Part shown: piece after piece, positions 59,513 to 64,000 of the stretch
Layout: every line of letters begins with the position of its first letter
Position numbering within the stretch: position 1 is the first letter of the stretch
Assembly (NCBI GenBank): GCA_001179505.1
Contig: CDMY01000288.1
Span: forward strand, 62,001 to 126,000
Reading direction: 5' to 3'
Origin: Vitrella brassicaformis CCMP3155
Taxonomy: Eukaryota; Protista; Chromerida
Length of the DNA: 64,000 nt
Notes under the pieces: generated by a model
Database searches by the model: none
The model's input: the letters and a program-made list of their open reading frames with translations, nothing else
Told to the model about the DNA's origin: nothing
Made by a program: the position numbers and the translations under genes

Positions 59513-61296
59513 ATGAACACCACCCGCCAGGGTCAGCCTCACCACCCGCCGTCCCAGTGGCGGCGCAAAGGCCCTGCAGCGGCAGCGCACCCTATCCCCC
59601 ACACACACCCACCGACACATCCGCCCACTCCTCAGCACACTCATGACGCCCACAGCGAGATGGTGAACGGCGCTCTGCCCAACGGCGTGCACCCCTACCC
59701 CATCCACGACGGCATCGTAGCGATGGAGGTGGCTGCCGGTGCGGGTCGAGGCGCCAAGAGCCGCGGGCGGAACAATCGCAGCAGGAAGAACAGGCGGGGA
59801 GGGAGGGGGGGCGCGGGAGCGGGTGGTCAGCAGGGGGTGGAGAATGGCCATGTGGGTGACGCCGCTGCTGCCGGTGGGCCTGTCGAGACGTCGGTGCTCC
59901 ACAACGGCCATGGCCTCAACGGCCACCCACCACAGCCCCCTCAGCACCACCAGCACGCAGAAGAAGAGGATGAGGAGGCTGCGGATGATGGCGAGGGTCA
60001 GGAGGGCGCCAACCCCATTAGCCGTCTGCCCATGCACCCCTCCAACTCGCACCATGATCGCTATCGCCGCGTGCAGGACGATGACCACGAAGAGATGTCC
60101 TTCTCCCGGCCATCCTCTTCGCCCAGCCCCATCTCACGGAGCAACGACCCATTGCACGGCGTGAGAGAGACGTTGCCCGAGACCTTCCAGGCCGTGGCTG
60201 CGCAGAACGGCGATCAGCAGCAGAGGGGGGCGGAGGGTGAGTTGAATCGCCTGCGTGTGCCGGGTGGTTTGACTGAGAGGCATTTGCGCCGCTCGCCGCC
60301 GAGTTTCCCGACGTCTGGTTCGTCGAATAAGCAGCACGAGCCTGAGGAGGAGCTGAGTCTCATGAACATCGCTGACTCCATGGAGAAGATCATCAAGGTG
60401 CGTGAGAGAGCGAGGGGAGGAGAGGAGAACAGGCCGGAGAAACAGAGAGAGGGTGAATGCCATCCATCCATTTGTGTGTGTGGTGGTGGGTCCGTCCACG
60501 CAGGAGTTGGGTGAGGATCCCAGCCGTGACGGTCTGTTGAAGACGCCCATGCGTTATGCAGAGTCGATGTCGTATCTCACGTCGGGATACAAGCAGAAGC
60601 TGGCAGGTAAGGAAGTGACGCGCAGAAAGCCACCAGAAGAACGCAAGAAGCGTGTGTGTTTGTGTGTGTGTGTGTGTGTTGGTTGTGGGATGGCTCGGAT
60701 GGATGGCCAGATGTGGTCAACGACGCCATCTTTGATGTGGACTGCAAGGAGATGGTCATAGTGCGGGACATCAACATATTCTCGCTCTGTGAGCACCACC
60801 TGCTGCCCTTCATGGGCAAATGCGACATCGGGTCGGCACACACACACATACACACACACACGGACACAGACAGACACACTCGCGCAGCGCATACTGACAA
60901 GAGAGAAATTAAGGCGAGTGGACGCGTGTGTGTGTGTGTGTGTGGTTGCAGGTATATTCCCAACGGGAAGGTGTTGGGCCTGTCGAAGCTTGCGAGGATC
61001 GCTGAAATGTTCTCCAGGAGGCTGCAGGTCAGCCAACGCATTCCATTCACCCGCCGTGTCCGGCCGGATGAGATGTCGGTGTTGTGTTGTGTTCTGCTTG
61101 TGCGTGTGCAGGTGCAGGAGCGTCTGTGCAAGGAGATTGCCGAGGCCATCGACGAGGCCGTCAAGCCCCTGGGCGTGGGCGTCGTCATACGCGCCACGTA
61201 CGAACGGAACCGACCGACCGACAAAACCATAAGCTAGACAGACAGCGGCCGACACACACACACACATCCACACACATCGACACAAACTTGTGTGCA

Positions 61297-61328
<32 letters not shown>

Positions 61329-61573
61329 TTCAGGCACATGTGCATGGTGATGCGTGGCGTGTCGAAGCCGGGCGCTCTCACCATCACCAGCGCCGTCCTC
61401 GGCTGCTTCAGGTGGGTGGGTGGGTACACGACGCCATCCATCCATCCATCCATCCACCCACCATGGCTCTGTCTGTCTGTCTGTCTGTGTGTGTGATTGT
61501 CAGGCGTCAGCACAAGACCCGTGCCGAGTTTTTGAACCTGATCGCCCAGGACAGACGGGACATCTTCTCATAG
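59513..61573 (+). CDS. GCH1: GTP cyclohydrolase I with a long low-complexity N-terminal extension
   Basis: [52 protein letters not shown]...[18 protein letters not shown] and KTRAEFL across GT-AG-spliced exons. Confidence 0.95.
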
Positions 61574-62856
61574 GCAGGCAGGCAGGCAGACACACCACCA
61601 TGATGACATACATGGCTGCATCCATCGTGTCGGCCCCTTTTCCTCCACGAGGAGGCACGGACCGGACGGTCACATCGCACACAACGGAGACAGACAGGAG
61701 AGAGAGGTGGGGGCTCGTCTCGTCCGTGCTGTAGGCAGAGAAGAGAGAGAGAGGTGTCATGGTTCGATTGGGCCGGGGGTTCGGATTTTTCAACTGAGTT
61801 GCGGGCTGTCTGTGTGTCTGACTGTTTGCCATAATCACATCAATGATCTCATCGGTTTTGCACTCACTGGCCCGCATGAGCACGTGTGTGTGTAGATACT
61901 CCTCACTATCTCACTTTCCCGCCTTCGAGCCGTTGCTGTCAATAGTGTCACCCACCACTATCGTCTGATGCCGCTTGCTCTTGGTTGCTCGTCTTTCTAG
62001 GCCCTCTGTCGCCTGACACGGTACGGTGCTGCTCCAGCAGAAGAACCGATGCAGGCCTGGGGCCGGATTGGCCTGTATTCTCTCTCTCTCTCTCTCTCAT
62101 CGCTGCGTGTGGTGTGTTGTGCTTGGATGCACTGCATGCGAAAGAGCTGCACGTCATGTTTGTTGCGGTCAGCCGCCCGCTGCATGTCGTGTGGATGGAC
62201 GGACATGCCTTTCTGCCTGCCGGAGAAAGAGTTTTCAAGTGAGGATTTTGTCGTCGAGCGCGTGTACGTGTGCGTGTGCGTGTGCGTGGCAATGACAGTG
62301 ACAATGACACAATGGAAATCAGGGCTCGGAGCGTGATATAGAGGCTGATGATATACTTATAAAGGGAAGCATCCACACGGAGGTCTTGAAGGCATAGAGC
62401 TATTGCAACACACACACACACACACACATGAAAGATGTAAGAGTGTCCTGTTACCACCCAACCACCCCACCCGCCCTCCGTCCCGCCGATACATCTGTAT
62501 GCACACGCGTAGATAGAGAGGGTATACAAATATGAACGAACCAGCCAAGCCAGAGTGGATAAAATATCGTTGCCTTGCCAGAGGCAAAAAGTTGAATCCG
62601 CTTCATCGATCTCGCTCCACCAGCCAGCCCTTTCCCAGCCAGCACACATACATATCAGAAGATAGGCAGAGCCATCCTTCCTAAGGAATTGGCCACACCC
62701 TCCTGCACTAACGAAGATCCCCCAACCATAGCTACCAAAACCGATAGATCATCGAGAGAAAAACAAAACCTGGGCAGGGCATCACGCCCTCACGCACCGT
62801 TCGCCCGCCTGACTGCCCCCATGTGGTCTGCCCGTGTGGTGTGTCGGTGTCGGTGC

Positions 62857-64000
62857 TCACGCAAGGCCACGGATACACCTGAGGGATTATTGCAAACACA
62901 CAATCCAACGAGTGTGTGCTGTACATCTTTCTCTGTTTCTGGGTCAATCGACTGTATGCTCGCTTACAGCTGAAGGTGGCGCTTCATTTCGTGTGCCGGT
63001 ACGGGCTTGTTGCACCGGGGGCAGCATCCCGGCTCGCTTTTCGCACGCTTGGCAGGAGGCGTATTGGCGACGGCCTCAGGATGCTGGTCGTCCTGCTCAC
63101 GCTTGATGGCCACCCCACCGCCGCCACCGAGGGGGATGCCCGCACCACCAAACGCCGGAAACGCGCCACCCACCGGTCCGCTAGCACGTCCGCCCCGCCC
63201 CCGGCCCGACGCACGACGTCCGCGGCCACGACCCGACACACCACCACCGCCCCCATCACCACCACCGGCAGCAGCAGCAGCGCCCGACGCACGACCAGCA
63301 GAGCTCGATACGGCAACACCTGAATGAAGTGACAGTGCAGACATCGTTGAAGGAGGGGAGGGAAGGGGAGGGGAGGGGAGGCGACTTTTTGTTGTGTTAT
63401 CTCACCTATGAGGGGTCGGCCGGCAGGTGTGTTGATGAGGTCCCAGGTGCCACTGCAGAGGGTCTGGTGGGTTTTGAACCACTTCTCCCCGTTGCTGCCG
63501 GGGGGATTGTTGCTCTGCTTCCAGTGCAACTCGCCACATCGCTGCACACGCGCACCCATGCCAACCCAATACGGCGTTTGGCGTCTGTGTGTGGTAGTGG
63601 TTGCGTACGTTGCACTGCCACACGTAGCAGCGTTTGATATCCGGGTCGTCGAGGCCCACCAGAGGGTTCACGCTCACACTAAGATCTGCACACACAGACA
63701 TGATGCCGACACACACACACACACACACACATGCGCACAGCCATTCAGGTGTTGACCGTTGTGTGAGTGTGTGTGCCCGTTTGGCCTGCCTGACCGTCCT
63801 TGCGAGTATCGGGGTGGTTGTTGATTTCTTCCATCTTGGTGAGAAACGCCTGTGTAAGCAGGTGGGTGAGTGAGTGGAAAGATGGCTGCCTGCGTGGCGT
63901 GGCATTGCTTTGCTTTACCATACCTGTGTGTGTACGTTGGATTTGTCGCCGTACTTGACGTAGAGGTGCGCGTGGATCATGAGATGCAGCAACACTTCCT
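62857..64000 (-). CDS. SPRTN: Spartan/SprT-like protein, 3' part (5' end beyond the window), with a UBZ4-type zinc finger; HExxH reads HLMIH
   Basis: EVLLHLMIHAHLYV...NVHTQ|AFLTKMEEIN...YVWQCN|RCG...NNPP...WFKTHQTLCSGTW parallels the SPRTN protease and zinc-binding subdomains. An RG-rich linker follows. An 89-nt GT-AG intron (62879-62967) completes CPRC-x11-HLQLC. Confidence 0.8.

What the first reader, a model, noticed from the sequence alone, without database searches (positions are those of the whole stretch)
63972..63998. Spartan-like protein lacking the catalytic glutamate: HEMIH changed to HLMIH
Seen: the minus strand reads GAA GTG TTG CTG CAT CTC ATG ATC CAC (EVLLHLMIH), with Leu at 63981-63983. 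The likely third Zn ligand (NVH), the Cys/His zinc-binding subdomain and a C-terminal UBZ are retained, and no frame disruption is visible in the window. Known: SPRTN cleaves DNA-protein crosslinks through the HExxH Glu (human E112), and E112 mutants are inactive. Glu to CTC needs at least two base changes, so a single sequencing error is unlikely. Inference: a conserved pseudoprotease that may act as a DNA/ubiquitin-binding adaptor or a regulator of an active paralogue.
Basis: partly seen in the sequence, partly recalled or inferred. Interest (0 to 1): 0.75.

Follow-up and report, generated by a model that had tools for sequence, protein, structure and literature searches.

The report
Catalytically dead SPRTN duplicate, 5' frame-broken
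The alga Vitrella brassicaformis carries, beside a normal SPRTN DNA-protein-crosslink protease gene, a much-diverged second copy that is transcribed and spliced but has lost the catalytic glutamate and whose real mRNA no longer joins the start codon to the protease domain. It is therefore either a non-cutting adaptor protein or a gene on its way out.

Summary
The minus strand at 63972-63998 reads EVLLHLMIH, with CTC (Leu) at 63981-63983. Two RNA-seq assemblies and an MMETSP transcript carry the same codon.

The gene is Vitrella brassicaformis CEL99777.1/A0A0G4EQN6. It is a nine-exon SPRTN homologue: PF10263 at 50-59 bits, human SPRTN 6MDW as best sequence and fold match.

It keeps three catalytic-site His, four ZBD ligands, an SHP box (FGGAGIPLG) and a complete UBZ4, whose last Cys lies in a mini-exon.

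- Loss is wider than the Glu. This copy keeps 25 of 38 columns at least 90% conserved in 54 canonical SPRTNs. The intact paralogue on contig C340 (HEMIH) keeps 37.
- No orthologue was found, so "conserved" is unsupported.
- Just outside the window, every transcript assembly splices intron 1 so that the ATG-initiated exon-1 ORF (92 codons) is out of frame with the SprT ORF. The first in-frame ATG there is "MVNIKW", inside the domain. The annotated 385-aa model relies on a donor no assembled transcript uses.

Coding signature remains strong (GC3 0.80 against 0.54 in introns; no stops). My best reading is a long-lived pseudoprotease, possibly a Cdc48/ubiquitin adaptor, now translationally crippled. 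The rival is a decaying duplicate.

The parts
63972..63998 (-). EVLLHLMIH: the zinc-binding helix motif with Leu in place of the catalytic Glu (HExxH changed to HLxxH)
   Evidence: The identical string is in RNA-seq contigs L009 and L010. It aligns to ETLLHEMIH of human SPRTN 6MDW/6MDX.
63981..63983 (-). CTC Leu codon at the position of the SPRTN catalytic Glu; it differs from GAA/GAG at all three bases
   Evidence: The column is E in 59 of 59 canonical homologues.
63924..63998 (-). Exon 4 (25 codons), holding HLMIH and the third zinc ligand His (NVH, codon 63930-63932). A GC-AG intron lies upstream, with its 3' end at 63999-64000.
   Evidence: Exon boundaries come from mapping the transcript to the genome. 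PF10263 E 8.9e-4 for this exon alone.
63795..63849 (-). Exon 5 (AFLTKMEEINNHPDTRKD plus the first base of the next codon)
   Evidence: the spliced protein P0001.
63609..63685 (-). Exon 6. It is the degenerate counterpart of the conserved 'ITVYHxFHDEV' block, followed by the first ZBD Cys (WQCN).
63406..63541 (-). Exon 7, the SPRTN-type zinc-binding subdomain (second Cys, then HQTLC)
   Evidence: PF22934 E 7.1e-4 for the exon alone. Invariant C142, C145, H168 and C172 are kept. AF2 pLDDT is 70-89.
62968..63319 (-). Exon 8, a disordered Gly/Arg-rich (RG-repeat) tail with the SHP box, a KRAK basic patch and the first three UBZ4 ligands
   Evidence: AF2 pLDDT is below 50 over residues 191-278.
63126..63152 (-). 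SHP-box consensus FGGAGIPLG (FxGxGxxLG), the p97/Cdc48-binding motif of SPRTN
   Evidence: A regex over six frames finds it only here, not in the C340 or C334 loci. Motif function comes from PMC9127365. Binding was not tested.
62875..63023 (-). UBZ4 zinc finger C-x2-C-x11-H-x3-C, split by the 89-nt intron at 62879-62967
   Evidence: zf_UBZ (PF18439) scores 14-16 bits, below its cut-off. AF2 pLDDT is 78-93 with strand-strand-helix. The paralogue C340 has an intron at the same place.
62857..62878 (-). Terminal mini-exon 9 (CIRGLA plus the TGA stop), supplying the fourth UBZ4 ligand
   Evidence: Spliced in L009, L010, P0001 and P0005.

Best explanation
This is a lineage-restricted, strongly diverged duplicate of the SPRTN DNA-protein-crosslink protease gene of Vitrella brassicaformis, and it can no longer cut. 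The general-base Glu of HExxH is Leu, and a third of the otherwise near-invariant SPRTN positions have changed.

What it keeps is everything needed to fold and to bind: three active-site His, the four ZBD zinc ligands, an RG-rich basic tail, an SHP box and a complete UBZ4.

The most likely working model (inferred) is that, for most of its history, it acted as a non-proteolytic adaptor. It would bind DNA through the ZBD and RG tail, ubiquitin through UBZ4 and Cdc48/p97 through the SHP box. It would work beside the canonical protease encoded on contig C340, which has a PIP-like box and a UBZ4 but no SHP box.

In the sequenced culture, the dominant mRNA is frame-broken at its 5' end. A 92-codon ORF starts at the ancestral ATG and carries a SIM-like VIDLLSSDEDE and an MIU/UIM-like motif. 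It ends 2 nt before the first ATG of the SprT frame. So at most an N-terminally truncated 283-aa protein lacking helix alpha-1 can be made, or a minor in-frame splice isoform.

Shown here: the sequence, the splicing, the expression at RNA level, family membership, the loss of Glu and the frame break. Inferred: the adaptor function, and that any protein is made.
For: Identity and family:
- PF10263 scores 50.4-59.1 bits.
- phmmer to human SPRTN 6MDW gives E 1.4e-12 over the SprT and ZBD regions.
- The AF2 model is confident for the protease subdomain (pLDDT 80-97), the ZBD and the UBZ. Foldseek's top hits are 6mdw/6mdx at E 1e-10.

Dead catalysis:
- HLMIH against HEMIH in 59 of 59 homologues.
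- E112Q abolishes SPRTN proteolysis (PMC9127365).

Long persistence under selection:
- The SprT frame has 0 stops in 312 codons, against 8 and 7 in the other frames.
- GC3 is 0.72-0.88 in exons 2-7, against 0.54 in introns and the UTR. That is at least as high as the intact paralogue (0.75).
- All eight introns, including a GC-AG one, are spliced.
- All 7 metal ligands among the 38 conserved columns are kept although 13 columns changed (hypergeometric P = 0.038). The four UBZ4 ligands are kept as well.
- The Glu codon differs at three bases, so the loss is old while the ORF stayed open.

Paralogy:
- By my reading, five intron positions are shared with C340: after Y-P/Y-Q, before E[VT]LLH, after HTQ/HGP, a phase-1 intron before exon 6, and one inside UBZ4.
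- Exon-wise identity is about 38%.

Motif split: the SHP box is only in this copy, and the PIP-like QGTLDAFV is only in C340.

Frame break:
- L009 and L010 both join ...ACAAG to TATTTC....
- Read across that junction, the SprT frame scores 59.1 bits on profile positions 2-99. The annotated model scores 54.1.
- That reading aligns QALLQGYNHKYFGGEL to human QALFVQFNDQFFWGQL.
- Position-specific composition also favours that frame (log2 LR about +5).
Against: - No orthologue was found, so purifying selection could not be measured.
- The main ORF sits behind five upstream AUGs and a 92-codon ORF. That would normally prevent efficient translation and invite nonsense-mediated decay.
- The only AUG-initiated SprT product lacks helix alpha-1, which is confidently packed in the model.
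- 13 of 38 near-invariant positions are lost, which fits relaxed constraint equally well.
- The SHP, UBZ4 and SIM assignments rest on short motifs. zf_UBZ and SPRTN_ZBD score below their Pfam cut-offs.
- The ORF's Gly-rich part has low GC3 (0.47).
- The similarity of the N-terminal ORF to the paralogue's N-terminus is not significant (E 0.48).
- All three transcript sets may come from the same or nearly the same culture (0 differences in 3.5 kb).
Confidence: 0.5

Rival explanations
1. It is an expressed but functionless duplicate in decay. After duplication the copy lost catalysis, drifted, and has now suffered a 1-nt-type frame break in exon 1 that uncouples the start codon from the domain. 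The transcript is noise or an NMD substrate, and no useful protein is made.
For: - A frame break is present in the genome and in all transcript assemblies.
- The in-frame annotated product is absent from transcript contigs.
- Five upstream AUGs precede the SprT ORF.
- 13 of 38 near-invariant columns are lost, including the catalytic Glu.
- No orthologue was found anywhere.
- The genome has many other DPC proteases that could make it dispensable: a canonical SPRTN, a GCNA-like gene and about six WLM loci.
- GC3 of the exon-1 segment upstream of Met324, read in the SprT frame, is only 0.50 (P = 0.004 against 0.8).
Against: - There are no stops in 312 codons, against 7-8 in the other frames. GC3 is 0.72-0.88 in exons 2-7, far above the intron background of 0.54.
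- All eight introns are still spliced.
- All 11 metal ligands and the SHP consensus are kept.
- About 62% protein divergence from the paralogue with an intact ORF means that most of the divergence happened under selection.
- The Glu codon changed at three bases without the ORF collapsing.
- Any decay would therefore have to be very recent.
Confidence: 0.35
2. One reading: an intact, full-length 385-aa pseudoprotease (CEL99777.1) made from an in-frame splice isoform, which acts as a regulator of the active paralogue.
For: - In-frame alternative GT donors exist 7, 25 and 31 nt downstream of the donor actually used. They look no weaker than other donors of this gene.
- The Augustus model with RNA-seq hints chose the +25 donor (P0005; method in PMC4501334).
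- The active paralogue exists.
Against: - Two RNA-seq assemblies and the MMETSP ORF all use the frame-breaking donor.
- The 385-aa product is not on record in any transcript contig.
- The annotated junction inserts residues with no counterpart in SPRTN and scores 5 bits lower on PF10263 than the transcript junction read in the SprT frame.
Confidence: 0.1
3. It is still an active metalloprotease that uses another residue or a water network in place of the HExxH Glu.
For: All three His zinc ligands are kept and the fold is predicted with confidence.
Against: - Leu cannot act as a general base.
- Even the conservative E112Q change abolishes SPRTN proteolysis (PMC9127365).
- Glu is invariant in 59 of 59 homologues.
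- Other conserved active-site-proximal blocks are degenerate as well.
Confidence: 0.03
4. It is a sequencing or assembly artefact, at the Leu codon or at the frame break.
For: None was found.
Against: - The genome assembly and two RNA-seq assemblies agree base for base.
- The codon differs at three bases.
- There is no homopolymer of 4 or more near the frame switch.
Confidence: 0.01

Closest known systems
SPRTN / Spartan / DVC1 (human SPRTN, structures 6MDW and 6MDX; Pfam PF10263 plus PF22934)
   Same: - The domain order matches: SprT protease subdomain, ZBD, basic/disordered region, SHP box, C-terminal UBZ4.
- It is the best sequence and fold match.
- The three His and the ZBD ligands are conserved.
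   Different: - The catalytic Glu is replaced by Leu.
- 13 of 38 near-invariant columns are changed.
- There is no PIP box.
- The ZBD is shortened (C-x2-C instead of C-x4-C, and a deletion after it).
- In the real mRNA, the SprT domain is not joined in frame to the start codon.
The canonical Vitrella SPRTN paralogue on contig C340 (about C340:106900-108900)
   Same: It is in the same genome, shares five intron positions (including the one inside UBZ4), and has a UBZ4 and acidic SIM-like motifs.
   Different: C340 has HEMIH, keeps 37 of 38 conserved columns and has a PIP-like QGTLDAFV, but has no SHP box in any frame. The two copies are only about 38% identical exon by exon.
The early 'DVC1/C1orf124 as p97 adaptor' view of SPRTN, and pseudoenzymes in general (for example iRhom pseudoproteases). 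This comparison is from my own knowledge.
   Same: Both show a catalysis-independent use of binding modules (SHP for p97, UBZ for ubiquitin) on a protease scaffold, with the fold and metal sites retained and the catalytic residue lost.
   Different: No binding or phenotype data exist for this protein. Well-studied pseudoenzymes are conserved across species, and this one has no known orthologue.
Wss1 (WLM domain) and GCNA/ACRC, the other SprT-related DPC proteases
   Same: They are distantly related minigluzincin-type folds. Wss1 also uses SHP and SIM motifs.
   Different: This protein matches SprT-like and SPRTN_ZBD, not WLM. The Vitrella WLM loci and the GCNA-like HECCH gene are separate genes.

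Membership tests
SPRTN (SprT-like DNA-dependent metalloprotease) | SprT-like protease domain (Pfam PF10263) above the curated cut-off | tested here: met
   P0001 scores 50.4 bits, P0005 54.1 bits and the transcript read in the SprT frame 59.1 bits, against a cut-off of 25.6. 6MDW gives E 1.4e-12. Foldseek 6mdw gives E 8.8e-11.
SPRTN (SprT-like DNA-dependent metalloprotease) | HExxH with the catalytic Glu (human E112) | tested here: not met
   HLMIH, from codon CTC, in the genome and the transcripts. Glu is present in 59 of 59 homologues.
SPRTN (SprT-like DNA-dependent metalloprotease) | Three His zinc ligands (HxxxH plus a downstream His) | tested here: met
   H79, H83 and H97 of the alignment are kept.
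SPRTN (SprT-like DNA-dependent metalloprotease) | SPRTN-type zinc-binding subdomain (PF22934) | tested here: inconclusive
   Pfam scores of 13-20 bits are below the cut-off of 27. However, the four Cys/His columns are kept, the 6MDW alignment runs through the ZBD, and AF2 folds it with pLDDT 70-89.
SPRTN (SprT-like DNA-dependent metalloprotease) | SHP box for p97/Cdc48 | tested here: met
   FGGAGIPLG fits FxGxGxxLG. This is at motif level only; binding was not tested.
SPRTN (SprT-like DNA-dependent metalloprotease) | C-terminal UBZ4 zinc finger | tested here: met
   C-x2-C-x11-H-x3-C is complete after splicing of the last intron. zf_UBZ scores 14-16 bits, below its cut-off. AF2 pLDDT is 78-93.
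SPRTN (SprT-like DNA-dependent metalloprotease) | PIP box | tested here: not met
   There is no Qxx[LIMV]xx[FYHW][FYVLW] match in this protein. One is present in the C340 paralogue.
SPRTN (SprT-like DNA-dependent metalloprotease) | DNA-dependent proteolysis | not testable with these tools
   This needs a biochemical assay.
Pseudoenzyme (pseudoprotease) | The fold of an active enzyme family with an essential catalytic residue missing | tested here: met
Pseudoenzyme (pseudoprotease) | Maintained by selection (conserved orthologues, dN/dS below 1) | tested here: inconclusive
   No orthologue was found. Indirect support comes from the open frame, GC3 of 0.8, the kept ligands and the intact splicing.
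Pseudoenzyme (pseudoprotease) | The protein is actually produced | not testable with these tools
   RNA is present and spliced. The main ORF lies behind a 92-codon ORF and five AUGs.
Pseudogene | A disabling lesion in the ancestral reading frame | tested here: met
   The exon-1 ATG ORF and the SprT frame are in different frames on the real transcript. The SprT frame is closed by a TGA 29 codons before its first ATG.
Pseudogene | Loss of coding signature or accumulation of further lesions | tested here: not met
   There are 0 stops in 312 codons, and GC3 is 0.72-0.88 in exons 2-7.

The most novel reading that the evidence does not exclude
SPRTN's two jobs have been split between paralogues in a chromerid. 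The canonical copy (C340) keeps proteolysis and a PIP-like box but has lost the SHP box. This copy has given up catalysis and specialised as the Cdc48/p97- and ubiquitin-binding adaptor (SHP plus UBZ4 plus ZBD/RG tail). It would be expressed from an mRNA that also encodes a separate 92-aa SIM/MIU-type peptide ending 2 nt before the main start codon. That would be a natural separation-of-function experiment on the long-debated protease-versus-p97-adaptor roles of SPRTN.
Probability: 0.2. Interest if true: 0.65.

Novelty: new variant of a known kind. Interest (0 to 1): 0.4.

Why it matters
SPRTN is essential for DNA-protein-crosslink repair. Its non-proteolytic roles (p97 recruitment, ubiquitin reading) have been hard to separate from catalysis, because they can only be studied with engineered E112 mutants.

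A naturally dead paralogue that keeps the SHP box, UBZ4 and ZBD, while the catalytic paralogue lacks the SHP box, would be a natural separation-of-function allele. I found no described SprT/SPRTN pseudoenzyme in the searched literature.

The case also shows that a public gene model (CEL99777.1/A0A0G4EQN6) is held in frame by a splice donor that no assembled transcript uses. That matters to anyone using the protein in comparative work.

If the gene is simply decaying, it is an ordinary example of duplicate loss, caught early.

Tried and rejected
- **Sequencing error at the codon or the frame break.** Rejected. The genome and two RNA-seq assemblies agree, the codon differs at three bases, and there is no homopolymer near the switch.
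- **Programmed -1 ribosomal frameshift joining the two ORFs.** There is no X XXY YYZ heptamer anywhere in the 82-nt overlap.
- **An extra intron inside exon 1 that would restore the frame.** None is spliced in either transcript contig. The candidate GT/AG pairs I checked by eye either keep the TGA or have the wrong phase.
- **An upstream ATG or near-cognate start in the SprT frame.** There is no ATG between the TGA and Met324.
- **Using GC3 alone to decide the frame of the last 54 nt of exon 1.** This is ambiguous, because frame 1's third position is frame 3's first. A position-specific composition model and the Pfam score both favour the SprT frame.
- **Homology of the 92-aa N-terminal ORF to the paralogue's N-terminus.** BLASTP is not significant (E 0.48), and there is no Pfam hit. 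The SIM-like and MIU-like motifs are by eye only.
- **Orthologue hunting.** The whole-protein word search was swamped by the Gly-rich tail. The SprT-region word search, the ZBD-exon exhaustive search and the metagenome scan found nothing beyond the protein itself and canonical SPRTNs. Distant orthologues, for example in Chromera, could still have been missed.
- **A tree including the C340 paralogue.** Not made.

Full report
**What is there**

The window is G000:C288:62001-126000 of a 72.7-Mb, 1064-scaffold assembly. The protein look-up identifies the organism as Vitrella brassicaformis CCMP3155. That matches the published assembly statistics (PMC4501334).

On the minus strand, 63924-63998 translates to EVLLHLMIHAHLYVKYGDKSNVHTQ, with CTC (Leu) at 63981-63983. 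The coordinates and reading of the first-stage note are exact.

The gene has introns and runs off the window. I fetched C288:124500-132000 (L004) and read the 5' exons there.

**How the spliced model was handled**

I did not build or submit a joined sequence.

The one exhaustive protein search, run with the ZBD exon alone (window:63407-63541:-), returned a spliced protein already in the public collection: P0001, 283 aa, an MMETSP transcript ORF. Its cluster mate is the annotated protein CEL99777.1 / A0A0G4EQN6 (P0005, 385 aa).

An exact look-up of P0001 returned two RNA-seq contigs: L009 from SRR646408 and L010 from ERR558152. All full-length analyses used these referenced sequences.

For the paralogue on contig C340 I had no referenced spliced protein. 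It was therefore compared exon by exon only. In one search its exon fragments were aligned as separate rows and merely printed on one display line. Nothing joined was saved or searched. No tree including C340 was made.

**Gene structure**

Mapping L009 onto the genome gives nine exons. In window numbering:
- E4 63924-63998
- E5 63795-63849
- E6 63609-63685
- E7 63406-63541
- E8 62968-63319
- E9 62857-62878

E1-E3 lie beyond the window, at C288:126455-126744, 126282-126374 and 126088-126162.

Intron 3 is GC-AG. The last intron (62879-62967) splits the UBZ4 finger. Unspliced, the frame would stop right after ...HLQL. Spliced, it continues CIRGLA* and supplies the fourth ligand, giving an exact C-x2-C-x11-H-x3-C.

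**Family assignment**

- Exon by exon: E4 hits SprT-like (E 8.9e-4), E7 hits SPRTN_ZBD (E 7.1e-4) and E8 hits zf_UBZ (E 6.6e-3), in SPRTN order.
- The spliced protein hits PF10263 at 50.4 bits.
- phmmer against the PDB finds only human SPRTN (6MDW, E 1.4e-12), aligned through both the protease and ZBD parts.
- An AF2 model built with 38 homologues is confident for the protease subdomain (pLDDT 80-97), the ZBD (70-89) and the UBZ (78-93), with a disordered tail between.
- Foldseek's top hits are 6mdw/6mdx (E about 1e-10, probability 1.00), followed by minigluzincins and Wss1.

**How unusual is the Leu, and what else changed**

All 59 canonical SPRTN homologues collected (animals, Mucorales, Tetrahymena, green algae) have HEMIH. 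E112Q abolishes SPRTN proteolysis (PMC9127365). CTC differs from GAA/GAG at all three bases.

The divergence is much wider than one residue. Thirty-eight columns are at least 90% conserved among 54 canonical sequences. The Vitrella paralogue on C340 keeps 37 of them and this gene keeps only 25. Losses include the T of TLLH, the G of HGP, the VYHxFHDEV block and the H of HWW.

All 7 metal ligands among those columns are kept (P = 0.038 for that by chance), as are the four UBZ4 ligands. The sibling first-stage note's wording, 'only the catalytic Glu is lost', is therefore wrong.

**Paralogues**

A six-frame Pfam search of the genome finds three SprT loci:
- this one;
- C340, which reads ETLLHEMIHAYLF... 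and is a textbook SPRTN;
- C334, with HECCH, a GCNA/ACRC-like SprT.

There are also about six WLM/Wss1-type loci and no second copy of the C288 type.

By my reading, C288 and C340 share five intron positions, including the one inside UBZ4. They are only about 38% identical exon by exon.

The motif content differs between them. C288 has an SHP box (FGGAGIPLG) and no PIP box. C340 has a PIP-like QGTLDAFV and no SHP box in any frame.

**The 5' end, the main new result**

Both RNA-seq contigs join exon 1 to exon 2 as ...ACAAG|TATTTC.... With that junction:
- The ORF starting at the exon-1 ATG (MAQQDVIDLLSSDEDE...) is 92 codons long.
- It ends at a TGA two nucleotides before the ATG of the SprT ORF (TGAccATGg).
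- It is in a different frame from the SprT ORF.
- The SprT frame is closed by a TGA 29 codons upstream of that ATG and has no other ATG.

The annotated 385-aa model keeps the frame by using a donor 25 nt further downstream, which adds ...RCAVRLQCT. That product is not on record in any transcript contig. The MMETSP ORF also starts at MVNIKW.

The transcript junction is the ancestral one. Read in the SprT frame across it, PF10263 rises to 59.1 bits and reaches profile position 2. The annotated model scores 54.1. That stretch, QALLQGYNHKYFGGEL, aligns without gaps to human QALFVQFNDQFFWGQL. A position-specific composition model agrees (log2 LR about +5).

So the start codon and the domain were once in one frame, and a frame switch now lies near transcript positions 225-237. 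There is no slippery heptamer and no homopolymer there. Five AUGs precede the SprT ORF's start.

**Is it alive?**

For continued or very recent selection:
- 0 stops in 312 codons, against 8 and 7 in the other frames;
- GC3 of 0.72-0.88 in exons 2-7, against 0.54 in introns and the UTR, at least as high as the intact paralogue;
- correct splicing of eight introns in independent libraries;
- the kept ligands and SHP consensus.

With about 62% protein divergence from the paralogue, a neutral history would have destroyed the frame. Most of the divergence, and probably the Glu loss (three base changes), therefore happened while the ORF was maintained.

Against:
- the frame break, the upstream AUGs and the loss of helix alpha-1 from any AUG-initiated product;
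- the absence of any orthologue;
- low GC3 (0.50) in the now untranslated SprT-frame part of exon 1.

The three transcript data sets show no differences over 3.5 kb. They may therefore represent one culture lineage.

**Verdict**

- Best reading (about 0.5): a long-lived, catalytically dead SPRTN paralogue that kept its binding modules and worked as a non-proteolytic Cdc48/ubiquitin/DNA adaptor. It is now translationally crippled in the sequenced strain, or is made as a truncated or minor isoform.
- Main rival (about 0.35): a duplicate caught early in decay.

I found no paper describing a dead SprT/SPRTN paralogue, and none linking SPRTN to chromerids. I rate it a new variant of a known kind, with moderate interest.

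Noticed in passing
window 60402-61237 (+): A GTP cyclohydrolase I gene (PF01227, 108 bits) lies convergent to the SPRTN-like gene. The RNA-seq contigs L009 and L010 run from the SPRTN-like transcript into this gene on the opposite strand, so the 3' ends of the two transcripts overlap or abut.
   Followed up: partly
G000:C340:106900-108900 (L005:952-2950): This is the canonical Vitrella SPRTN (ETLLHEMIH, ZBD at 51 and 37 bits). It has a PIP-like QGTLDAFV, a SIM-like VVDLTDDSES and a UBZ4 split by an intron at the same place as in C288. It has no SHP box in any frame.
   Followed up: partly
G000:C334:16964-17476 (L006:1363-1875): A third SprT-family gene carries HECCH (PF10263, 35.9 bits). It is GCNA/ACRC-like and lies next to a run of N in the assembly.
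   Followed up: partly
G000 contigs C280, C1064, C260, C603, C466, C265: About six loci have WLM (Wss1-type) protease domains above the Pfam cut-off. That is a large DPC-protease repertoire for a 72.7-Mb genome.
   Followed up: no
window 63999-64000 and beyond (C288:126000-126087): Intron 3 of the gene is a GC-AG intron (GCACGC...GTGCAG). It is spliced correctly in both RNA-seq contigs.
   Followed up: yes
P0004 (Octopus vulgaris, 487 aa): This octopus SPRTN-like protein has a second copy of the ZBD-like block (WQCYGPC...EKWF...CGGSF) at its extreme C-terminus, in addition to the normal one.
   Followed up: no
L004:4641-4930 (C288:129140-129429): An assembly gap (a run of N) lies about 2.4 kb upstream of the gene's start.
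   Followed up: no
window 61290-62450 and the gene's introns: Many (CA)n, (GA)n and (CAGA)n microsatellites occur in introns and the 3' UTR. They create long spurious ORFs in several frames, so an open frame alone is weak evidence of coding in this genome.
   Followed up: partly
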